A stretch of 54,870 nucleotides of DNA, the filler included, from Ginglymostoma cirratum (Eukaryota): the NCBI GenBank assembly GCA_024137785.1. It is 3 parts of 3 records of this genome, joined end to end, with 100 filler letters (N's around TTAATTAATTAA, not from the genome) between each part and the next. Parts side by side here need not be neighbours in the genome. Positions count along the whole stretch, not along the records: positions 1 to 15,797 come from JAHRHZ010000084.1; 2 more parts are not named here. One strand, given 5' to 3'. This document shows, piece after piece, positions 2,470-15,797 of the stretch. The notes below the pieces were generated by a model, which worked only from the letters and a program-made list of their open reading frames with translations, had not been told where the DNA came from and did no database searches. A program made the position numbers and the translations under genes. Within the stretch, counting starts at the first letter, position 1. Every line of letters starts with the position of its first letter.

Positions 2470-3720
2470 GACTTATCTATCTTCATACTTTGTAAGACAC
2501 ACAACACCTCTTCCTTTTTTTTAGCAACTTGGCTTAGAAACTCGCCACTCCCTTCCCTCCACCAATTCTTTCTCTTTGGTGAATGCCGACACAAAGTATT
2601 CGTTGAGGGCCTCGCCTACCTCTTCTGGCTCCACATACAGATTGCCTCCTTTGTCCTTCAGTGGGCCAAACCCTTCCCTGGCTACCCTCTTGTTTTTTAT
2701 ATATGTATGAAGAGCCTTGGGATTCTCCTCAATCCAGTTTGCTAACGACTTTTCATGACCCCTTATAAAGCCCTTCTAATTCCTTGCTTCAGGTTCTTTC
2801 CTGCTTTCCTTATATACTTCAAAGGTTTCAGGAGTTCCCATCCACCTAGGGATTACGTATGTTTGAACAAAAACAGAAGTTGCTTGAAAAACTCAGTCGG
2901 TCTGGCAGCATATGTGAAGAAAAAATCGTAGTTAACGTTTCGGATCCGATGACCCTTCCTCAGAACGTATGCTCCCTTTGTCTTCCTGATCAAGGTCATA
3001 ACATCCCTGGCCATCCAAGGATCACGTAACTTGCTATAGCTATCCTTCATTCTCGCAGGAACTTGCCGTTCTTGAACTCTTATCAACTGCCGTTTGAAAT
3101 ACTCCCGCATGTCCGATGTAAATTTACACTTAAACAGCCACCTCCAATCAAAATTCTCCAGTTCCTCCTTAATATTGTTGCAGCTCGTCATCCCCCAATT
3201 TAACACCTTCACCCGAGGACTGCTGTTATCCCTGTCCATGAGTATCTCAGGACTCACGGTATCGCTACTCCAAAAATGTTCACCCACTGAAACGTCGCTC
3301 CCCTAGACGGGCCCATTTCCCAAAACAAGGTGCAGTATAACACCTTACTTGGTTGGACTGTTTATATTTTGTGTCAAGAATCTCTCCTGAATGCTCCTTA
3401 CAAATCATGCCCCATCCAAGTCTGTAGCACGTGGCGAGTCCCAGTCAATCTCGCGTTAAGTTAAAATCACCCGCCACAACAATCTTGCTGTTTTTACATC
3501 TCTCCAAAATCTGTGTACATATTCTCTACTCTATCTCCCGCTGGCTATTGGAGGCCTGTGGTATACCCCAAGCATTATGATTTCACCTTTCCTATACCCA
3601 CCATCGCATCACAGGAGTCCTCTGACGTATCCTCCTTCAGAGCAGCTGTGACATTCTCCTTCATCAGTAATGCAACTCTCCCACCCCTTCTACCTGCCTT
3701 TCTGTCACACTTGAAATTGA
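2470..3720 (-). mobile_element. Degenerate CR1-type LINE ORF2 (endonuclease/tether region) with a nested short repeat
   Basis: Minus-strand peptides DRKAGRRGGRVALLMKEN, MGEHFWSSD, KVLNWG, DPWMARDV. Confidence 0.7.
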
Positions 3721-5903
3721 TGATGCTTGGACCAAGGCTGTAATGTGCTCCGAGGAGGAGTAAATTGGTGAAACTCAAACTGAACATTACTGAGTAGATT
3801 ATTGTCATGCAAGTTTCACCTCAAAGCACTGTGGATCGCACATTTCAGACCTCTGCTGAAATAAGGGGTAGGCTGATGGAACGTTACTTGCCCAGTTTGA
3901 TTTCTGCTGCCTTCTTTTTCTGGACGGGACATTAAAGTGGGCTACATTACAAACTGTTGGGTAGACGCCACTTGTGTGGGTGCGCTGGAAGAGCTTAGCT
4001 AGGGCCCTTCCACGTTCCGGAACGCGCGTCTTTCGTATTAATATAAGGAGGTTGTCTGAGTCCACAGTTTTTGCAGTAGCTGTGGCGAGATACACCTCAA
4101 CAGCCGAGATACTCAGCCTGGTGTTATGAAGCTGCACTCTGCTCCAGCGAAAAATATCATGAGATTCTTCCTTTTTTTTTCAGGAGAGCTACCACTGAGG
4201 GTAAGCGATTGGTACATGTGGCGCACTGCAGACCAGTGACTGGGGTTGATAGAGGAGTGAGGCTGGGGATGGGTGGTGCATTTGAAGTAACAATCATGCT
4301 TCATGATCGAACTGTAACTGTACTTCTTCAGAATAGAGTCGCTTCTTCAAAATAGAATCGTCTCAAATTCTTTGCATTAACGCACACCTCGCAAAAGCCT
4401 AAACCTTGTATTCATATTGTTATCCAAGAATAGCATTGGGCATAGCTATGACTTCCAACACTAACTAATTCAGATATCAGGGCTTCTATACTTATACTTC
4501 TGAAACAGCTGCAGTCATAACTAACCTATCTAAAGATAAAACTGTGAGTAAAAAATTTAAATAATGGAATTACTCACATTTTACTATTGCAAAAAGATAG
4601 GAGATATCGATGGAAGTTACAATCTGGGGTACATGTACGTTCTTTGAGAGCAACAGGACAAATGAAAAGGCTGAGAGGCAACGAGGATTCCTGACATCAT
4701 TAGAGAGACGGTGAATAAAGCAAGGAAGTTGCGCAACACATTTGTTGAGAACTATTTCGGTCTCAACTGGGATCTTCTGTAGAAATCTGTCGCGACCCTT
4801 TAGGGAAATTTCACGAAAATGGAAACACCGCAGATGTTTGCCAGAATGTAAACAAAGTCGTGGGATTTAACTATGTGATGAGACTTGAGAAGCAAGGGAT
4901 TTTCTCGTTGCGGTTGAGGAGGATGAAGCGAATTGATGCTGCGGTGCAGAGTTCACAATAGCTTTAAAAGGCAAATTAAAGAAAACTTCGCAGTTACAGA
5001 AGGGTCGGAAACTAAATTACAAAGAGGTAAGGCGATTGACAAAAGCACTAGAGGCTACAGGGAAAAAGTGGCGTACAATCTAGTCCTGTCCCGTTTTTAC
5101 CCATGCTACGACGAACAAAACTTCTGAATAATTTGCACCTGCAGGTTTAGAATAAAGCCAATAGAAGAAGTAACTGATTTGGAAACTACAAGCAGCTGAA
5201 CACTGTAAGTAAGCAAAGTCCTATTTCTATTTGATGAACTTTCGTACTCGAAACGTTAACTTTGCGTTCTTCTCACAGAAGATGCAAGACCTTGAGTTGC
5301 TCCAGCAATTTCTGCTGTTGTTCCCATTTTCATTGTTATCTTTTCTTTTAATTGTTTCTAACAGCAAAATGATTGTCTCTTTATTCCTCCTCTCCTCGCA
5401 CTTCCATCTGGAAATGCCTGAACACCACCCTGAAAAATATTTGTTGCTTTTCAGGCTGCTGCATTAATGGCAGTAACTATGAACCACGTGAACAGGGGTC
5501 TCGAATTTCACGCCTGCCGTGAGTGAAAATAATATTATCGTCGAAAGCCCTGGGCCGGAGATTGGGAATTGAGCAGAGTTATCAATCCTAACTGCTATTT
5601 CAATGATTTCTGCTTGAGATCGGAAGGGACTTGGAGATCCCAATTCTAAATATATTACCACTTTCACTGTCTTGCACATAGGTGAATACTTTAGGTGAGG
5701 TACTGGAAAAATAGCCATGCTTGCGACCTGAATCATTATTTTCAGACAGAGTCAAGGCTCGAAAGTTATTGTTCATAACTGATCGGAAAGCATTGTTCCG
5801 GCAGCGTCAGAAACACATTGTCTTCAGATAGAAATTTCTCAACGAGCAGTGAGCAAGGAGCCTCCCACTTCCCAGACTTCTGGGACTCAACACTCGTCAT
5901 GTG

Positions 5904-5930
5904 ATGACTCAGGTCATTATCATAGGCTTG
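5904..5930 (+). CDS. IgSF gene A, candidate leader exon 1 (MTQVIIIGL)
   Basis: ATG at 5904, 9 codons, GTAAGG donor at 5931 (phase 0); phase-compatible with the candidate exon at 6151. Confidence 0.35.
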
Positions 5931-6150
5931 GTAAGGTTTTCCGACAAACCATTCTGGACACCATCCTCATTTACAACAAGAAACCAACGAACTTTTCTTT
6001 ACGTCTGAAATATGTTCGTGACAGTTACAGTACAGTACATGACTCTACTTGGCATAATTTGGTCAGGTACATTTCGTTGCTATATGTCCCATGTCAAAAT
6101 CCGTTATATCCTATTTTAGGAGATAATGCAATGGTTCTGTATTGTTTCAG

Positions 6151-6238
6151 GAAACACTGTGCTGCTCCACTTCGATTGCTAAAACGTTCAATAGCTCTTG
6201 CATTTTACTTTGCGAAGTTCTTTTCCTGATGTACTTAT
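6151..6238 (+). CDS. IgSF gene A, candidate leader exon 2 (hydrophobic ILLCEVLFLMYL)
   Basis: TTGTTTCAG acceptor, 88-nt open exon, phase 0 to 1, GTTAAG donor; splices in frame to the V exon giving ...FLMYLSAEATSG-KVKQ, signal-peptide-like. Confidence 0.4.
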
Positions 6239-6421
6239 GTTAAGCAGGGGACTGAAAGCTTGTCGGCTTAAGAGAAGAAAGCGGATTTGTGGCTACAATT
6301 AGAACAGCCATTATTGAATAGCCGAGTAGGTGCGAAGGGCAGAATGGCCTATTCTTTCTCTATTCGTGTGGTGTACGTTGATTTGCAAATATTATCATCG
6401 CTCTTCTTTCTTTTCTGATAG

Positions 6422-6727
6422 CCGCTGAAGCAACTTCGGGTAAAGTGAAACAGTTCCCTAAATTTTTGAGCGTTAACAGAGGTGGGAATGTTTCCATCTT
6501 CTGCACGTTTCCTATCTTTGAAGAAACTCCTGATGTTTATTGGCGGAGACGGGGTGAGGAGTCGGTTCTGGAGGCAGACAGCAGAAAGCGATTCAGTGCT
6601 AACAAGGGAACAAGTTCTTTCTCAGTCCTAAACGCTAGTTTTGCTGATGCCGGTGTGTATTTCTGTGAAGTTAAGCACCAGCGAAGGTCGATTGGAGATG
6701 GGGGTGGCACACAACTGACTGTTTATG
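6422..6727 (+). CDS. IgSF gene A, V-set exon with built-in J-like G strand (germline VJ)
   Basis: Polypyrimidine+AG at 6420-21, GTAAG donor at 6728, phase 1/1; B-strand C (SIFC), C-strand W (VYW), DAGVYFC, GDGGGTQLTVY. Confidence 0.9.
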
Positions 6728-8611
6728 GTAAGGATCATTGTACCGGACAGGCTGCTTTTCAGTTTTATTAGATACTTTCACTTTTTTTAATCTCGAACAT
6801 TCTTCCAATTGCTTTTACACGGGTTTGTATTTTCGTTGTCATTGAGCTCGTGTTAAAACTGCAGATGCTGGAGTCAGAGTAGATACAATGTGGAGCTGGA
6901 GGAACACAGCAGGTCAGGCTGCTTGAGAGAAGTAAGACAGTCGGCGTTTCGGGCCTAGACCCTTCATTAGAACTTCACGAGTCCTTTTGTGGGGTCTTGG
7001 CCCGAAACCTTGACTCTCCTACTCCTTTGATGCTGCCTGACCTGCTGTGTCCGTCCGGCTCCACGCTGTATAGAGATAACAAGCATGGGGCTGGATGATC
7101 ACAGCAGGTCAAGCAGCATCACAGGAGCTGTGTTCATCCAGCCCCATGCTTGTTACCTCAGATTCTCCAGCATCTGCAGTACCTTTTATCTCCCACACTG
7201 TATAGACTCCAGTTATATAACAGCTGGTTCACTCTCGCCATTTGAGCACTTTTGTCTAAAAGCAATTTCACTCGCTTGCTCTCCTGATAGTTGAAAGGGT
7301 TCTATCTCCAACAGTTTTATTTGTGTCCAGTTGCAATTGTTTTCAAACCAAGATACCGGTAGAATAAAAGTTTAAATTTTGGCTTCAAAAGAACCAATGA
7401 GCGAAGAAAACGAAGTCCCTTCTTGCCAAAGTAACGATACCAGTATGTGACAACTAATTTACGCAAATCGAGGGTTAAAGAATGATGGAATTCTGAGTCT
7501 TGGCTATGCACTTAATGCAGTCCTGTTGGCCATAAGATCTAAGGAAACTTGCAAATTGGTAATGTCCTTAATTTATATTTCGAAAATTTCGGAAAGATAT
7601 GCATGTAAAGAAAACATTCAAATTGTTCTCAATAATATCACAAACAATTCAAAGTTAACAGGTTCATATATCAGGTATATAACGCCTATAGATTGTGCGG
7701 ACACTGTTTCACATCTGTTAGAGGTAAAAATAGAGCTGGTAAAAGCAGCGTGGAAATGAGTCCAACAGACAGAAAGAACAGAGAGACTTGCGAATTATAC
7801 AAGACATGCGCTCACAGTTAGATTTTTCCATCTCGGATACCCCATCTCTGCTAAAGTTATAAACTTCACACTGATCAATAATTAATAAAAGCTAAGGACA
7901 GTGTGAGGCCAGAGAAGCTGTTCCGATTGGTGAGGGAAAAAACAGAGAACACACATTTAAGATAACGCGCTATACAGTTGGGCACAACCGTCGGAAATCT
8001 TTTAAGTTTTTCAAGGATCTGGAATGCACTGCCGGAGACTCCGGTGCTATTGTGGCGTTCAAAGGCAAATTTATAATTTCCCCAAAAATGATTAAACGCT
8101 GCAGAGATGTGGTGAAGGGGATGAAACCAACAACCAGAACCGCAGTAGATCTGGCTACACTTGTGGAGAGAAATGGAATTAACGTTTCCAGTTTGGTTTG
8201 ACTCTTATTCAGGAGAAGTTTTGAGCATTGTGCGAAACAAAATGTTTGGTGCCGCAAAGCTTTATTACTGCAGTCAGGGGAGAGAGGATTCAGTGACAGA
8301 CTGGCGTGTACTGTCTCCGATAGATTTGGTCAGGAATCTGACTGTTGCTAATCCCAATCCCGCTCCACGACCTCATTCAGACCAATGTCCCTGCCTCCAT
8401 ACATGTAACCAGTCCTGGCAGATCAACCTTTTAGTTTATCTTTTCAAATATTCCTACAATTTTGCTGTGGTGCTGGAGCACTTCAACGTTTAAAATTAAA
8501 CGATAAAGAGCATAAGTATTGTCACTGTATGTATGTAGCAGCGTCACGGGTGCAGTCAAATGAGGATGTGTTCCACTAAACTTAAAAGAGAAAATTTTTC
8601 CCTCTTTTAAG

Positions 8612-8905
8612 TGTCACCATTGCCACTGAAACTCGTTCAAGTTGAAGGGATTTCCGCGGCTTCTTTGAAACTCGTGTGTAAAACTGCTGCCTGTTACCCG
8701 GAGCCTGTCGGTATCTCCTGGCGAAGAAATGGTGCCGCAAATCTGACCGGAATACAAACGGTAATAAAGACGGCAGATGGACTGTATGAGGTTTCCAGCT
8801 CTTTGGAAGAAGCGCAGCCTGTGCGAAGCGATGTGGTTTATACCTGTCTGGTATCACATGTTTCCCTTCCTGTACCCGCCAGTGTCAACTACACCGTCAA
8901 TCCAG
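8612..8905 (+). CDS. IgSF gene A, C1-set exon
   Basis: AG at 8610-11, GTAAG at 8906, phase 1/1; LVCKTAACYPEPVGISW...DGLYEVSSSL...YTCLVSHVSL is a C1-set pattern. Confidence 0.9.
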
Positions 8906-9149
8906 GTAAGGCAGGAAATATTTGCAGCAGTGAGAGGGACCCGTGCTCCAGCTTGGATTTATAGAGCAGATATATGGCTGAACAGCTGTCCAAACCAGAG
9001 AGAGGGGGTGAATGTGGACTGCATTAACACCAAAGCGGTATAAATGGAAAAGAAATTACAATGTTCAAAATGGTTGTCGGTGTAGGATAGAGAATATTCC
9101 CCTGAAGAGGTCTGAAAGGGAGGTGATGTGTGAGCTGCTCGAAAGCTAA

Positions 9150-10626
9150 AGATCATTCTTCATCAAAATCTTAGCGAGTAAAATGAAATCATACCTACAA
9201 AGACATTGTAGGAACTTAGGGAAGAAATTGCGCGGCGTGGGAGAGATCTTTATATCATCTATAACCACTGGTGAGGTGCTGGTGGACGGGCGGGTGGGTA
9301 ATATTGTGCCTTTACTTAAGAAAGCCTGAAAAGAGAAGTCTGGGAACAATGGACACTTGAGTGTGATATCAGTTGTGAGTAATTTGTTGGAGGGGGTTTT
9401 GAGAGACAGGATTTGCATGCAATTGAAAGGCAAGGACTGACTAGGGATAGTCAGCAGACTTTGTGTCCGGGAAAATGTGGGCTACATGACCAAGAAGATA
9501 GATGGAGGACAGAGTGGTAGATGTTGTCTACATGGACTTCAATAAAGCCTTTAACAAGGTTCTGCCTGGTAGACTGGTGACTAAAGTTAGATTGCATGGG
9601 ATTCGGGGATCTTGCCAATTGGATACAATATTGGCTTGATGGTAAAATAGACAGAGGGTAGAGTTAGAAGTTTGTTTTCCGAGACGTCACCAGTGGTGTT
9701 CCACTAGCATAGATGCTGCATCCACTGTTGTTTATCGTTTATATAAACAATTTTAATGAAAACTTAGGAAGCATGACAAATTTGGAGATGGCATCAAAAT
9801 TGGTGGATTCATGGACAGTGAAAAGAGTCATCTAAGATTACAAAGGGATCGTGATCAATTGAGCCAATGGGGCGACAAATGGCAGATGGAGTTTAATTTG
9901 GATAAATGCAAGGTATTGCACTTAGCAAGATGAACAATTGCAGGATATATACAGTTAATTAGTAGGACCCTGCGGATTGTTGCCTAACAAAGATACCTAG
10001 GGCTTATGGTATATATTTCTTTGAAGGTTGCATTGCACGTACACAGAGTGGTAAAGCAGGCATTTAGCATGCTTGTCTTCATTGCTCAGACTATTGAATA
10101 TAGAAGTTCGGACATCATGTGGTTGGTGAAGCTACTTTTGAAGTATTGTGTGCAGTCTGGTCGCCCTGCTATTGCAAGGATATTACTAAATTAGAGAGGG
10201 TGCTGGAAAGATTTATAAGGATATTACCTCGACCAGAGGGTTTGAGTGAAAGGGATAGGGTGGATAAACTTGGATTTTTTTCACTAGAGCATAGGTGGTT
10301 GATGGATGACCTTATAGAGGTTTATAAAATCATGAGAGGTATCGATAACGTGAATTGCAAACCTCGTTTTCTCGTGATGGGGAGTTCAAGCCTAGAGGGC
10401 ATATTTTTCAGGTGATAGAGTCTACATTTTCACACAGAGTGTGGTTGGTGTGGAATGAACTGCCAGGGGAAATGGTAGATGCAGGTATAATTACAACACT
10501 TGCACAGGCAAATGAATAGGAAACGGTTCGACACAGGTAAATGGGATTAGTTTAGTTTGGGAAACTTGGTCGGCACAGATAAATTGGACTGAAAGGTTTG
10601 TTTCCATGTTGTATGACTCCATGACT
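9150..10626 (+). mobile_element. CR1-type LINE, degenerate RT and 3' UTR
   Basis: VDVVYMDFNKAFNKV, WSPCYCKDITKLERVLERFIRILP...DDLIEVYKIMRG; ends in (ATGACTC/T)n tail. Confidence 0.85.
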
Positions 10627-10719
10627 TTATAAAAGCTGAATAAGTGATAATAGGATCTATGAGTAGGAGAGAATATGTGAGATGCAATTGAAAACAACAC
10701 ATGTCATGACAAGACTGGG

Positions 10720-11755
10720 TGTGGGGAGGGTAAAAAAGAAGGAAGGAAGAATCAGGCTCTAAAGTTCTTTAACTCCATGTTGAGTCCCTGAATGTTGCAG
10801 GGTCCCCAAGCAGAAAACTATATATTGTTCTTCAAGCTTGTGCTGAGGTTCACTGGAACACTGCAGCAAGACTGTGTTGAAGTGTTAGGCAACTCTGGAT
10901 CATTTTTGTAGAAAGAATGTAACTATTCTGCAAAACTGTCACACAGCCTGCATTTCGTCTCCCCAGTGTAGAAGCGACAACATTATGAGCAATGAATACA
11001 GTAGGCTATATTGAGTCAAATGCAAATAAATCTGCTTCACCTAGAATCATATAACTCATAGAACATGGAAGCTACGCCTGGAGCTTTGGATAGTGAGGAG
11101 GAAGGAAGAAAACATCCATAAACATGCAGTTGTCACACCTTTCGCCATTGCATGTGAAGGAGTGGGCAAGAGTGTCCCAGAGGCAATGGTCCAGCGGAAG
11201 GCTGGCAAGGGAGGGGAGGGTACATATGTCTGATGGTGGCTAATGATATTTTGTATGTGGACGTTGGTGGAATGGTAGGTGAGCACCAGGGGGTCTTTGA
11301 CATTGTTGAAGGAGGGACGGGTAAGAGTGAGGGCCGAAGTGCGAAAGATGGGTCAAATGCGGCTAAAGGCTCCGAGGACCACAGTGGCAGGAATCCACCT
11401 TGAGGAGAAAGGTGGCTTTTCTGAGGCCCCTGCCGAAGTTGGCATCATCAGAACAAATGTGTTGGAGATGGAGAAACTGGGAGAATGTGTTGGAATCCTG
11501 GCAGAAGCAGGGTATGAGGATGTAAAGATGAGGTAATTGTGGGAATGATGGATTTGTAACGGGTATCAGTGGCCAACCTATCCCAGAAATTGATGTGTTT
11601 CCACTTCACAGCGGGAAGGGGAAGCAGCACTAATGATGCCATCAATATGCTAGAGAAAGAGTTGTGGGTGGGAACTGCAATAGGATTGGAATAATCCATG
11701 TATCCCACAAAGTGACAGGCATAACTGAAGCCCATTCAGATAGCCATGGCCACGC
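10720..11755 (-). mobile_element. Penelope-like retroelement fragment
   Basis: Minus-strand VAM...MGFSYACHFVGYM resembles the PLE RT motif GTRMGPSYACLFVG; decayed GIY-YIG-region sequence follows. Confidence 0.6.
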
Positions 11756-12813
11756 TACGTTAAAGTATGGATTGTTTTTAATATAGTCACACGTTCTCAC
11801 ATACTTTTTGGCTTACTATCACATTATATGGATTGCTTTCAGTGCAGCTCGGCCATTCTTTCCTGCTCTTAGCTCCTATTATCATTTTGTCAGCTTTCCG
11901 TCTTTCCTAGCCTGCTCTCCATAATCTCCCAGCTGACTTACCTCTTTCACATCTCCCTCTTTCTGGGCTCCATCTCCACGTATCTACTCACCTGTCTTTT
12001 CATCCATTTCGTCTTCAGCATAAATGCCACGTGTTCCTAGCTGCTAACAGTACTGGTGGAGAGCGACAGGACCGAAACGTTATTCTGCTTTCTTCTCCCA
12101 GATGTTGCCAGACCTGCTGAATTTCGCCAGCAATTTCTGTTTTTGTTTCAGATTTCTAGCACCCATAGTTCTTTGTGTTGTTAAGAATAAATCAGTTCGA
12201 CGAGTTGCGTTTAGATCTCTGTTTACACATTTAAAATATGGAAATGTACTTGTGTCCATCTGGTATCTCCGCATTATAAACTTCAGATTTCCCGCCCGAA
12301 GAACCTTCGCACGTCTTTGCCCATCTCTCCGCTTACACACTCCCGAACTGTCTCCACCTCTTCTATTATCACTTTTGTATCAGGATTGTGTTTGATAACG
12401 CTGCCGTGGAGTGCGCTGGGACGTTTTGCCATGTCATCGGGGTTTTAGAAAATGTAAGATGTTCGTATTAACTGCGGAAGGCTGCTAAGGGAAGTCCTAT
12501 GTAGCACAGCACGTTTACTTTTTTAAAAAGTAGGACCTTTTACTCTTGACAAACAGCCCAGAGACAAGTCTCTTGTGTCCTTCTGGAATTGTTCCCTCCA
12601 TAAATTTGCATTATAGGCCTGTAGCTGATTTTTCATTTGAAACACGTTGTAATCCTTGTATACATACTACGCACAGAAACGAGTATTTATGGAACGCAAT
12701 GGTCCTGGGATACTCTTTGGCATCTCACCGTCCTGTGTCTGCTCCACGATGCTCTGCATATAAATCCCACTGTGCTCTGCAGTTTCTTATTCAAATATTT
12801 ATCAATTCTGTAG

Positions 12814-12918
12814 GTAAAGTTGGCACTCTCCCTTTGGTGTTTGGATGGACGGGTGGCGTGTTGGCAATTTTACTGTTGATATTCATTTTGACAAGACTCA
12901 AATTAAAGACATCATCTG
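12814..12918 (+). CDS. IgSF gene A, transmembrane exon
   Basis: TAG acceptor, GTAAG donor at 12919, phase 1/1; GKVGTLPLVFGWTGGVLAILLLIFILTRLKLKTSS: uncharged hydrophobic span then basic stop-transfer. Confidence 0.8.
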
Positions 12919-13044
12919 GTAAGAATCTTTATTATTTCGCCGAATACTGTCAGTTTCTAAGGCCCAATGTCTTTTTATCTTAATTTTTTAAATGATTTTA
13001 GCGTCTATAAAAAGCCAAAGCGCAGATGAACAGTGATTAGTCAT

Positions 13045-13357
13045 TTGATCAGATTCCCTACAAAGTAGAAACAGGCCCTTTGGCTCAAGAAGTCCACCCC
13101 GACCCTCACAGCATCCCACCCAGACCCATACCCTATTACCCAGCTAACCTACACATCCATTAATACTGCGGGCAATTTAGCATAGCCAATCCACCCAGCC
13201 TGCACATTTTGGACTGTGGGAGGAAACCGGAGCACCCGAAGGAAACCCATGCAGACACGGGGAAAATGTGCAAACTTCACACGGACAGTCGCCCAACGGT
13301 GGAATCGAACCCGGGTTCCCGGCGCTGTGATCTTGCTAACCACTGAGCCACCGGGCC
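13045..13357 (-). mobile_element. tRNA-derived SINE (HE1/V-SINE-like)
   Basis: Pol III A/B-box-like GTGGCTCAGTGG / GGTTCGATTCC and core GGGTGCTCCGGTTTCCTCCCACAGTCC on the minus strand. Confidence 0.85.
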
Positions 13358-15380
13358 ACCATTTTTTCCCTAAATCTCATCCTCTATTTCTCAACTTGTA
13401 TTTGTAGAAGTTGTAGAAGAATAACGAGCATTTAGAGCATTTTAAAGAATGAAGTGACTATTACAAGCCCGCTATGCGATCGGCAGTTCAATAGGACATT
13501 ATAAACCGAATATGTGGTTTTAAAGATGAATATTTCACCCTCCGATTCAATATATTTACTCGATTTCTACACGAACTCCCGTTCTTAAATTAGAAGAGTC
13601 CAGACCTTGCTATATATTAATTTTGAAATGGTACAACCTGAATAGCATTCCAGATTTTATTTCAAATGTAACTTTGTAATGCAAAATGGTCTGTCGACTT
13701 ATCACCGGTTGGCCACCATCCCTCCGAAGCAAAGTCTGCTCTGTTGTGTATAGCGCCACTATGATTTTACGAAGGTAACGCACAGCATTTTGTGAGTTGG
13801 ACTTGTTCATACTAGGTAACAAGCATGGGGCTGGATGAACACAGCAGGTCAAGCAGCATCATAGGAGCAGGAAAACTTGACGTTTCGGGCCGAAACCCTT
13901 CATCAGAAATGGGGGAGGGGAAGAGGGTTCTGAAATAAATAGGGAGAGAGGGGGAGGTGGATAGAGGATGGATAGAGGAGAGGATAGGTGGAGAGGAGGC
14001 TTCGACTTGTCTGCCTCCTCTCCACCTATCATAACTATCTAATCAGTGCAATTCCTCACTCTTTACACCGAACCCCGTATTTTTGCGACTATTAAATCGC
14101 CCGTATTCGTTCTCTGTCCGAAGGAAAGAAGTCGCATGTTGTCTAGTCTCTTCAACGTGACGGCAGTCCCTCATCCACAACACGATTGCAAAAAAATCTC
14201 TTCTGCATCCTTTCCCGTGTGTTACATCACCCTTCAAAATGTAGCGGCCAGTATGCGGCACCATGGTTCAATTGAGCTCTAACCAATGACTTACAGTGCT
14301 AAACATAAATGACTTGCTTTGGCATACTATATCATTATTTAGAAAGGTCAAGATAACCCCTTGCATTTAGTGTAACATACACTTCTGATTAGGGTACCAG
14401 TTGGGTTAATCGGGGGGGCCTGTGTGTCAGATTAATGAACACAGCACGGAATTTGGACCCTCTCTGACTTAGGTTGAGGTGAAGGCAGGACCTGCTGGCT
14501 TACCACACTTTAGGATGACTACGTGTGTTCTTGAGAAAAGATCGTTCTGGGAATAGGTGATCTTATCTATGAAATTAGGTTGTCAGAGTTGCATTGTTCA
14601 CTGTTACGCAGAGGAGAGTGAGGATGTGATATAGGTGTCCAAGATTGCGACAGGTTTAGGTATAACAGACAAGTGAAAAAAACGAATCTCAATCATTGTA
14701 AGGAGACTGCATGCTAGAGGTTTTGGGAAAGAGGTTGAGAGGAATGCTGGGATTTTTGTTTTAAAACTAGCTGTGGTAATGATCCAGAACTTAATGGCCA
14801 GGAGGGTACGAGAAATTGAGATGAGCACTGATTACAAAAGGAAATCAGAGGGGCACTTTAAAGAAATAAATTTGCAGACCTTCACTGATGAAGCATGGGA
14901 GTGGGACAAACTGAAGCACGCTGGGGAAGAGACTGTAAACTTGATTGACTTTTCCCTCTGCCTCCAATTGACTCCATATATTTTAAAGTTAATCTTAACT
15001 TGTTGAGGGGATGTGGGTGTTACTGGCTGGCCAGCATTTAATCTCCATACACAATGACCCTGAAACTGCAGCAGCTCCTTTGGTATAGGTACATGCATCG
15101 TGATATTAAGAAGTAACTGATCCAGCAACAGTGCAAGAAAGGTTGCATAAAACCAGCTGTGGATAGTGTGCAATCGGGAAGTGAATGTGTAGGTGGTAGC
15201 ACTTCCACGGAGCAACTGTTTACATGCTTGTTGATGGAAGGTGTCACAGGGTTAGGTGGTGCTTTCAAAGTGGTGATTGACAGCAGGAAATTTCATTCCA
15301 TTCTTATTATTAAGCTTACTTGCCTCAAGCTATGAACTGATGAACTAATGCATTATATTAAATATTACTTTCACAGATAG

Positions 15381-15524
15381 AACAAAGCTATGAAGATAAT
15401 AGTGTCCTATACCACGTTAGAGCTTGGTCATTTGAAGAAAGCAACAAAACCTAAACAACCAGACAACTGTACAGTATATGCACAAGTAAAAGTGGCAAAA
15501 GGAAGACAGAAGCAGAGAATCTAA
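15381..15524 (+). CDS. IgSF gene A, terminal cytoplasmic exon with ITIM and ITSM-like motif
   Basis: After TTTCACAGATAG reads NKAMKIIVSYTTLELGHLKKATKPKQPDNCTVYAQVKVAKGRQKQRI-stop; VSYTTL fits ITIM, TVYAQV fits TxYxxV; needs an unlocated phase-shifting exon. Confidence 0.65.
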   Translation, partial: NKAMKIIVSYTTLELGHLKKATKPKQPDNCTVYAQVKVAKGRQKQRI

Positions 15525-15797
15525 AAAAAAAATCTGAAGATGTGAACTATTTAAATGGTACAGGACCAAGATAATTACTTATACATAATAGATCATGCAA
15601 TTTTTTGCAGCTAGTCCAAAGACCAAGAGATGGCAACTTCACAGGCAATGTACGTGGATATTGAGTAGTGAGAGCAAAACTAAATATCACCTTCAAACAG
15701 AGGTAAAAAGGTACTGCAGATGCTGGAGAATCTGAGATAACAAGGTGTGGGGCTGGATGAACACAGCAGGCCAAGCAGCATCATAGGAGCAGGAAAG

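What the first reader, a model, noticed from the sequence alone, without database searches (positions are those of the whole stretch)
5904..15524. Germline-joined VJ-C1 receptor with inhibitory ITIM + ITSM tail
Seen: VJ exon with intact diglycine bulge (GDGGGTQLTV), a true C1 exon, an uncharged TM and a tail with VSYTTL and TVYAQV. Known: ITIM followed by ITSM is the PD-1/SIRP/Siglec SHP-recruiting layout, and VJ+C1 outside Ig/TCR is rare (SIRP, tapasin-like). Inference: an antigen-receptor-shaped checkpoint or NK-type receptor, possibly the inhibitory counterpart of gene B in a paired system.
Basis: partly seen in the sequence, partly recalled or inferred. Interest (0 to 1): 0.75.

Follow-up and report, generated by a model that had tools for sequence, protein, structure and literature searches.

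The report
Shark SIRP-like V-C1 receptor, tail unlinked
This is one more copy of a shark gene family for surface receptors built from one antibody-like variable domain and one constant domain; it still carries an inhibitory tail piece in its DNA, but the small exon that would connect that tail in the right reading frame cannot be found.

Summary
The V exon (6422-6727), C1 exon (8612-8905), uncharged TM exon (12814-12918) and a tail ORF with VSYTTL and TVYAQV (15381-15524) are all real. The V, C1 and TM exons are phase 1 with canonical splice sites.

The family-like leader is 6012-6066.

The gene belongs to a family found only in cartilaginous fishes here, which NCBI mostly labels [quoted passage not shown] (SIRP-alpha-like). 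The closest relative is a Heterodontus protein, 68% identical in V and 64% in C1. It is neither a SIRP orthologue (one C1, not two) nor a UrIg.

Isoforms of relatives indicate that the last exon is entered in phase 0, through a roughly 44-nt juxtamembrane exon. No such exon is detectable in the 2.46-kb intron:
- Splicing TM directly to 15377 gives 5 codons then a stop.
- Splicing to 15381 gives 24 codons then a stop.
- Only the weak AG at 15386-87 restores the ITIM frame.

No RNA evidence was obtainable.

My odds: about 0.55 that the inhibitory tail is uncoupled, about 0.33 that it is translated.

This scan has already found the family many times on other DNA of the same genome.

The parts
6012..6066 (+). 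Leader (signal peptide) exon: 18 codons plus 1 base, with donor CAG|GTACAT and phase 1
   Evidence: This was the only upstream ATG-started hydrophobic segment ending in phase 1 near the V exon. It resembles family leaders: tblastn against P0026 gives E 0.007 and against P0024 17 residues at 41% identity. The HMM match alone is not significant, at i-E 1.5.
6422..6727 (+). V-set exon with a J-like G strand (GDGGGTQLTV at 6694-6723), phase 1 at both ends
   Evidence: Pfam V-set scores 1.9e-10. It is 67.5% identical to P0027 at E 3.4e-32, and the family HMM gives i-E 1.1e-41. The canonical Cys, Trp and Cys fall in the family's invariant columns.
8612..8905 (+). C1-set exon, phase 1 at both ends
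   Evidence: Pfam C1-set scores 4.3e-8. It is 64% identical to P0027 at E 3.6e-31, and the HMM gives i-E 1.9e-42. One nearly invariant Phe is Cys here, at 8692-8694.
12814..12918 (+). Transmembrane exon of 105 nt, uncharged core, phase 1 at both ends
   Evidence: It has the same length as the exon skipped between isoforms P0151 and P0161. It is 66.7% identical to P0027 over 36 residues, and the HMM gives i-E 9.4e-6.
15375..15387 (+). Three tandem AG acceptors (exon starts 15377, 15381, 15388) in front of the tail module
   Evidence: See the sequence. From the phase-1 TM exon, start 15377 gives a split codon, 4 codons and a stop. Start 15381 gives a split codon, 23 codons and a stop. Start 15388 gives the ITIM frame. 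Crude acceptor scores are 2.4, 0.7 and -2.8.
15381..15524 (+). Terminal cytoplasmic module: ITIM-like VSYTTL (15402-15419), ITSM-like TVYAQV (15471-15488), stop at 15522-24
   Evidence: See the translation. tblastn to the last modules of P0027 gives E 0.001 at 48% identity, and of P0149 E 4e-4. It matches HMM positions 323-358 at i-E 1.7e-5.

Best explanation
This is a genuine member of the cartilaginous-fish 'SIRP-like' V-C1 receptor family. It has a split leader, a non-rearranging VJ-type V domain, one C1 domain, an uncharged inhibitory-type TM segment and one terminal ITIM/ITSM-type module.

In intact long-tailed relatives the likely mechanism is as follows (inferred from motifs, not tested). 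The V domain binds an unknown ligand, the paired tyrosines are phosphorylated, and they recruit the tandem-SH2 phosphatases SHP-1/SHP-2.

In this copy, however, the tail is most likely uncoupled:
- The family reaches its last exon in phase 0, through a roughly 44-nt juxtamembrane exon and usually one or two further modules.
- None of these is present in the 2.46-kb TM-to-tail intron.
- A transcript spliced at the two better acceptors therefore ends after 5 or 24 out-of-frame codons.

The product, if made, would be a short-tailed receptor without ITIM/ITSM, either non-signalling or decoy-like, or a copy at the start of decay.
For: Family membership:
- The big HMMER search with the V exon gave 529 proteins at E<=1e-3. 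I fetched 28 of the 150 listed, choosing the short ones with one or two matched stretches. Most are V-C1-TM proteins, and a few are V-only or lack C1.
- 7 of the 10 I looked up are named 'tyrosine-protein phosphatase non-receptor type substrate 1-like'.
- All 31 of 31 hits to P0151 are chondrichthyan.
- All five exons match the family.

Phase of the last exon:
- P0189 and P0163 end in the same last-exon sequence after different upstream residues (Q and L). This excludes phase 1.
- P0192 and P0193 differ by one 37-residue module, with ...Q|TKQ on both sides.
- P0151 and P0161 differ by the 35-residue TM exon.
- P0182 and P0190 differ by one residue at the junction after the TM exon.
- Module exons end in Q or K codons, as expected for ...AG|GT in phase 0 (inference).

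Missing link:
- The family HMM finds nothing for profile positions 266-322 anywhere in the window.
- tblastn of 28 whole relatives finds nothing better than E 0.035 outside the five exons.
- In 72 stop-to-stop intron segments the best score is -1.3 bits, against a top of 3.5 among 1440 shuffles.
- The best of 82 splice-compatible phase 1-to-0 candidates scores 2.8 by my crude measure, against 6.6-8.2 for the real exons.
- Motif scans found one hit, inside a repeat.
- There is no second module copy at the DNA level; the best match has E 0.93.

Frames.
Against: - Leader, V, C1 and TM exons are all intact with good splice sites, which argues for a gene still under selection.
- The tail module is open for 47 codons, keeps both tyrosine motifs 23 residues apart, and stops where the family stops.
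- The AG at 15386-87 happens to be in the right phase for a direct TM-to-ITIM join.
- A 44-nt exon that has diverged could escape every search I ran.
- One in-frame candidate, 14849-14934, shows faint colinear resemblance to relatives, with best E 0.022 for 13 queries.
- My splice scores use consensus frequencies recalled from memory.
- No RNA data covered any exon.
Confidence: 0.55

Rival explanations
1. One reading: a functional inhibitory receptor. The TM exon is joined in frame to the ITIM/ITSM module, either directly at the third AG (exon start 15388) or through an unrecognised exon of 2+3n nt. The tail then recruits SHP-1/SHP-2.
For: - The four upstream exons are intact.
- The module ORF is intact, with VSYTTL and TVYAQV 23 residues apart and a family-like stop position.
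- Exon start 15388 is in the right phase.
- The C1 exon of this same gene also uses an AAG acceptor.
- The candidate exon 14849-14934 is in frame and shows faint similarity to relatives.
Against: - The acceptor at 15388 is the weakest of the three (-2.8 against 2.4 and 0.7). It has two AGs within the 11 nt upstream and no pyrimidine tract.
- Every tail-bearing relative in alignment A1 (17 of its 18 sequences) has a juxtamembrane segment that is absent here.
- The candidate exon has poor splice scores (-0.6 and -2.6). It is not significant by HMM shuffles or by hhalign, which gives probability 0.09 and E 0.6.
Confidence: 0.33
2. It is a straightforward orthologue, or a fragment, of tetrapod SIRP-alpha.
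For: - A profile of the family finds SIRP-alpha D1-D2 (2wng) at rank 6 of 11,815 matched PDB sequences (E 6e-26), and SIRP-gamma at rank 21. These are among the few non-antibody entries in the 60 shown.
- NCBI pipelines name most members SHPS-1-like.
Against: - There is only one C1 exon, and no second Ig exon anywhere between C1 and TM or elsewhere in the window.
- Neither exon alone lists SIRP among its 60 best PDB hits.
- UrIg2 and antibody chains score as well or better.
- Pipeline names are inconsistent. Of 31 proteins, 11 are SHPS-1-like, 7 NCR3LG1-like, 3 tapasin-related, 2 TCR-beta-like, 1 Ig-lambda-like, 1 SIRP-beta-like and 6 unnamed.
- A 2026 survey table, of which I saw passages only, places the SIRP family's appearance at Tetrapoda.
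- The word search with the relative's tail found only 5 Heterodontus proteins and no SIRP.
Confidence: 0.04
3. It is a UrIg/UrIg2-type gene or a rearranging Ig/TCR segment.
For: - The C1 exon hits UrIg2 (9dmx) at E 1e-10, rank 3.
- The family profile hits UrIg2 at rank 2.
- It has a split leader and a VJ exon, as UrIg does.
Against: - Nurse shark UrIg2 has a VJ plus nine C1-type domains (section read in full). This gene has one C1.
- The UrIg2 paper has 0 occurrences of ITIM, ITSM or SIRP.
- V and the J-like strand lie in one exon that ends at a splice donor, so no rearrangement is needed.
- The closest proteins are the SIRP-like family at 55-69% identity, not UrIg.
Confidence: 0.02

Closest known systems
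Predicted chondrichthyan 'tyrosine-protein phosphatase non-receptor type substrate 1-like' proteins, e.g. Heterodontus francisci XP_067906043.1 (P0151)
   Same: They share the split leader, VJ-type V, single C1, 105-nt TM exon and a terminal module with an ITIM followed about 22 residues later by xVYAxV. Identity is 69% in V, 66% in C1 and 67% in TM.
   Different: The relative has a 14-residue juxtamembrane segment and two more tyrosine modules before the last exon. This gene has neither.
Mammalian SIRP-alpha / SIRP-gamma
   Same: SIRP also has a non-rearranging VJ-like V followed by C1-set domains. It is the best non-antibody V-C1 match in the PDB for the family profile. Its tail has an ITIM-type design that recruits SHP-1/2 (established knowledge, recalled). 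A tail-less reading of this gene would resemble SIRP-gamma in layout (recalled).
   Different: SIRPs have two C1 domains and this gene has one. Orthology, CD47 binding and SHP binding were not tested. A 2026 survey (passages seen) dates SIRPs to tetrapods.
UrIg / UrIg2 of elasmobranchs (Flajnik et al. 2025, PMC12227049)
   Same: It is a non-rearranging VJ exon with a split leader and C1-type domains, from the same animals.
   Different: UrIg2 has nine C domains in nurse shark, and the paper's text never mentions ITIM or ITSM. This gene has one C1 and an ITIM-type module.
PD-1-type ITIM + ITSM tail layout
   Same: The order is the same: an (S/I/V/L)xYxx(I/V/L) motif followed by TxYxx(V/I), spaced 23 residues apart. 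The motif definitions are recalled.
   Different: PD-1 has a lone V domain. The resemblance is one of motif logic only, and there is no sequence relationship shown by any search.

Membership tests
Chondrichthyan SIRP-like V-C1 receptor family | VJ-type V-set exon with the family's invariant Cys/Trp/Asp/Tyr/Cys and a GxGxG...L.V G strand | tested here: met
   The second Trp of the family's WW pair is Arg here, as it is in P0068.
Chondrichthyan SIRP-like V-C1 receptor family | A single C1-set exon following V, in phase 1 | tested here: met
Chondrichthyan SIRP-like V-C1 receptor family | A 105-nt TM exon of the uncharged (long-tail) type | tested here: met
   It has the same length as the exon skipped in isoform P0161.
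Chondrichthyan SIRP-like V-C1 receptor family | A juxtamembrane exon bridging phase 1 to phase 0 before the tyrosine modules | tested here: not met
   It was not detected by HMM, tblastn, splice enumeration or motif scan. A diverged microexon cannot be excluded.
Chondrichthyan SIRP-like V-C1 receptor family | A terminal ITIM...xVYAxV module, translated in frame | tested here: inconclusive
   The module is present and intact. It is in frame only via exon start 15388. No RNA data were available.
SIRP family proper (SIRP-alpha/beta/gamma) | An ectodomain of V plus two C1 domains | tested here: not met
   There is one C1 exon only, and no other Ig-like match in the window.
SIRP family proper (SIRP-alpha/beta/gamma) | Orthology (tree position or synteny) and CD47 binding | not testable with these tools
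   There is no flanking gene in the window, no SIRP sequence was returned as a usable protein id, and binding needs experiments.
SIRP family proper (SIRP-alpha/beta/gamma) | A tail that binds SHP-1/SHP-2 when phosphorylated | not testable with these tools
   Only the motifs are seen.
UrIg / UrIg2 | VJ followed by several C domains (nine in nurse shark UrIg2) | tested here: not met
   One C1 exon, against the description in PMC12227049 section 7.
Rearranging Ig/TCR V gene segment | A V segment ending before the J motif, with separate J segments | tested here: not met
   V and the J-like strand are one exon ending at a GT donor in phase 1.

The most novel reading that the evidence does not exclude
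The locus may be the inhibitory-type half of a SIRP-alpha/beta-style pair. Its partner would be the Arg-TM neighbour that an earlier scan note places about 11 kb upstream. Both would sit inside a chondrichthyan-wide, apparently unpublished family of single-V, single-C1 receptors that are not rearranged. This copy would then show how such families make tail-less members: by losing a 44-nt juxtamembrane microexon, which throws an otherwise intact ITIM/ITSM exon out of frame.
Probability: 0.25. Interest if true: 0.5.

Novelty: new member of a known kind. Interest (0 to 1): 0.3.

Why it matters
The family is of interest for two questions. One is what non-rearranging V-C1 genes looked like near the origin of antigen receptors. 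The other is how early paired inhibitory/activating receptor families arose. I found no description of it in the held library, only pipeline names.

This copy adds little on its own. It is one more member, and the scan has met the family repeatedly in this genome. Its one particular point is that the inhibitory module is intact in the DNA but apparently disconnected. That makes it a simple test case for how tails are lost in such families.

Tried and rejected
**Tried without result**
- The word search with the V exon alone found nothing. Its length window of 56-177 aa excludes full-length relatives, so this says little.
- The word search with the tail of relative P0151 found 5 proteins, all Heterodontus, and no SIRP.
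- Only two small runs were listed, each holding next to none of the words. Laid on 12500-15797, their contigs covered only repeated elements (13050-13380, 13820-14040, 15690-15797) and no exon. There is therefore no evidence for or against expression or any junction.
- The open frame 14677-15003 gave the best faint hits to relatives' TM and juxtamembrane parts (E 0.022). I rejected it as unproven because it has no Pfam match, scores below shuffles, and hhalign gives probability 0.09.
- There are no Pfam hits for the reverse-transcriptase-looking ORFs at 9502-10415 or for the minus-strand ORFs at 2853-3808.

**Literature searches**
- Searches: (0 papers for 'signal regulatory protein' + 'cartilaginous fish' + 'itim').
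- None of the listed titles or abstracts describes this family.
- I read PMC12227049 (outline and abstract, section 7 in full, one term search), passages of PMC13262535, and one passage of PMC11599192.
- Supplements were not requested. The supplementary tables of PMC12227049 and PMC13262535 might list such genes.

The exon phases of relatives are therefore inferred from predicted isoforms only.

**Joined model**
Every search used single exons.

Full report
**What is in the sequence**

On the + strand there are four exons with canonical AG/GT borders:
- a leader at 6012-6066, 18 codons plus one base;
- a V exon at 6422-6727;
- a C1 exon at 8612-8905;
- a transmembrane exon at 12814-12918.

The V, C1 and TM exons are phase 1 at both ends, and the leader ends in phase 1.

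Pfam calls the V exon V-set (1.9e-10; 41.3 bits against a cut-off of 26). It calls the C1 exon C1-set (4.3e-8; 33.8 bits against 21). The TM and tail pieces have no family.

The G strand carries the J-like GDGGGTQLTV (6694-6723), inside the same exon as the rest of V and followed directly by a splice donor. No rearrangement is therefore involved.

The TM core has no charged residue.

A further open frame, 15381-15521 with its stop at 15522-24, holds VSYTTL and TVYAQV with the tyrosines 23 residues apart.

The segment at 6012-6066 fits in phase and looks like the leaders of relatives. Its statistical support alone is weak (HMM i-E 1.5).

**Relatives**

The word search with the V exon alone was blank, as expected from its length window.

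The full HMMER search with the V exon returned 529 proteins at E<=1e-3. The top of the list is crowded by giant multi-Ig proteins. I fetched 28 of the 150 listed, picking the short ones with one or two matched stretches. Most are V-C1-TM proteins, many with tyrosine-rich tails, and a few are V-only fragments or lack C1.

Ten were looked up:
- 7 of 10 are named 'tyrosine-protein phosphatase non-receptor type substrate 1-like';
- one is named NCR3LG1-like;
- one is uncharacterised;
- one comes from an unnamed ENA contig.

The species are Heterodontus, Scyliorhinus, Narcine, Mobula, Callorhinchus, Heptranchias and Mustelus.

A search with the full-length Heterodontus relative P0151 gave 31 proteins at E<=1e-10 among 3463 candidates. 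All are chondrichthyan, and their pipeline names are inconsistent.

tblastn of the relatives onto the window hits exactly the five parts listed above. For P0027 the values are:
- V: 67.5% identity, E 3e-32;
- C1: 64%, E 4e-31;
- TM: 66.7% over 36 residues;
- tail: 48% over 33 residues, E 1e-3.

An HMM of 18 relatives gives 1e-41 (V), 2e-42 (C1), 9e-6 (TM) and 2e-5 (tail, profile positions 323-358, which is the terminal module).

In FastTree trees of the V and C1 columns the window sits inside a shark group with Heterodontus, Scyliorhinus and one Heptranchias sequence. That group mixes long-tailed, short-tailed and Arg-TM members. I did not print support values and no rows were dropped.

I did not verify the species of the window. 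An earlier scan note calls the genome nurse shark.

**The tail problem**

The TM exon ends one base into a codon. Three AGs stand in front of the tail module (15375-76, 15379-80 and 15386-87):
- Joining TM to 15377 gives a split codon, four codons and a stop.
- Joining TM to 15381 gives a split codon, 23 codons and a stop, with no ITIM.
- Only 15388 gives the ITIM frame.

By a crude score built on recalled consensus frequencies, the three acceptors rate 2.4, 0.7 and -2.8. The third has two AGs within 11 nt upstream and no pyrimidine tract.

**How relatives reach the last exon**

- The TM exon is 35 residues in relatives, seen from P0151 against P0161.
- P0182 against P0190 shows a one-residue choice at the junction after the TM exon.
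- P0192 against P0193 shows one 37-residue module skipped, with ...Q|TKQ on both sides.
- P0189 and P0163 carry the same last-exon sequence after different upstream residues (Q and L). This is impossible if two bases of that codon came from the shared exon, so phase 1 is excluded.
- Module exons end in Q or K codons throughout the alignment. This is what ...AG|GT in phase 0 would give (inference).

On this reading the last exon starts in phase 0 with T-K-Q. The window's equivalent is the phase-0 start at 15381, and the TAG at 15378-80 is simply the end of the intron. What relatives have between TM and that exon is a juxtamembrane exon of about 14 codons plus two bases (phase 1 to 0), usually followed by one or two more modules.

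**Looking for the link**

Nothing in 12919-15380 matches that segment:
- The family HMM has no match to profile positions 266-322 anywhere in the window.
- tblastn of 28 whole relatives finds nothing better than E 0.035 outside the five exons.
- Among 72 stop-to-stop segments of the intron the best HMM score is -1.3 bits, against a maximum of 3.5 among 1440 shuffles.
- The best of 82 splice-compatible phase 1-to-0 candidates has a crude summed score of 2.8, against 6.6-8.2 for the three real internal exons.
- Six short patterns gave one hit, inside a repeat.
- The module has no second copy at the DNA level; the best match has E 0.93.

The only lead is the long open frame 14677-15003. Three relatives align faintly and colinearly to it, with best E 0.022 among 13 queries and 111 retained HSPs. 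It contains an in-frame candidate exon at 14849-14934. However, its splice scores are poor (-0.6 and -2.6), hhalign gives probability 0.09, and Pfam finds nothing. I treat it as chance.

**RNA**

Only two small runs were offered, both holding next to none of the words. Their contigs covered only repeats in 12500-15797. Expression and junctions are therefore untested.

**Weighing**

For a working inhibitory receptor:
- four intact upstream exons;
- an intact 47-codon module with both motifs and a family-like stop position;
- an AG in the right phase.

For an uncoupled tail:
- every tail-bearing relative in A1 (17 of 18) has the bridging segment, and this gene has none;
- the two better acceptors give early stops;
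- the rescuing acceptor is poor;
- earlier scan notes, which I did not check, report many decaying copies in this genome.

I put about 0.55 on an uncoupled tail (a short-tailed product or early decay). I put about 0.33 on a translated ITIM/ITSM tail. The rest goes to other readings.

The signalling mechanism is inferred from motifs and from established knowledge of ITIM/ITSM receptors: tyrosine phosphorylation followed by SHP-1/2 recruitment through tandem SH2 domains. Nothing here tests it.

**Comparison with known systems**

A profile of the family finds SIRP-alpha D1-D2 (2wng) at rank 6 and SIRP-gamma at rank 21 among 11,815 matched PDB sequences. UrIg2 is at rank 2, and antibody chains fill the rest of the 60 shown.

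The single exons do not list SIRP in their top 60.

The gene has one C1 where SIRPs have two. UrIg2 has nine C domains, and the paper describing it never mentions ITIM.

A 2024 paper lists SIRP among the joined-VJ IgSF members together with CD79, NITR, CD8, NKp30 and PRARP (one passage). A 2026 survey table places the SIRP family at Tetrapoda (passages).

So the gene works, or once worked, like a SIRP-type inhibitory receptor, but it is not shown to be a SIRP.

My five literature searches listed no paper on this chondrichthyan family. Supplements were not seen.

**Limits**

All searches were exon by exon.

Noticed in passing
window 8692-8694: The C1 exon has Cys where at least 90% of 30 aligned family sequences have the Phe of the A-F-Y-P stretch. 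This leaves an extra, probably unpaired cysteine.
   Followed up: partly
window 6544-6546: The second Trp of the family's nearly invariant W-W pair in the V domain is Arg here. The elephant-shark relative P0068 has the same change.
   Followed up: partly
window 14677-15003 (+): There is a 109-codon open frame inside the TM-to-tail intron, unusually long for this AT-rich DNA. It has faint colinear hits to relatives' TM and juxtamembrane parts (best E 0.022). It is not significant by HMM shuffles, hhalign or Pfam.
   Followed up: yes
window 13050-13380, 13820-14040, 15690-15797: Short elements here are covered at very high summed depth by hundreds of contigs of runs X1 and X2, at 90-99% likeness. 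These are interspersed repeats of this genome, and no exon was covered.
   Followed up: no
window 9500-10520 (+) and 2850-3810 (-): These ORF fragments look to me like LINE reverse-transcriptase and endonuclease remnants (from recall). Pfam found nothing at E<=0.1, so they are unconfirmed.
   Followed up: partly
proteins P0015 / P0155 (ENA contigs of about 1 kb): These two unnamed 135-aa predictions are read-throughs of a related V exon into its intron. The first roughly ten intron codons resemble those after 6727 in the window, so the start of that intron is conserved with some other shark.
   Followed up: no
relatives P0163 / P0164 / P0189 (Heterodontus): Three 'isoforms' with consecutive accessions combine two different V exons and two different last exons. 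The predicted gene models there probably merge neighbouring family members.
   Followed up: no
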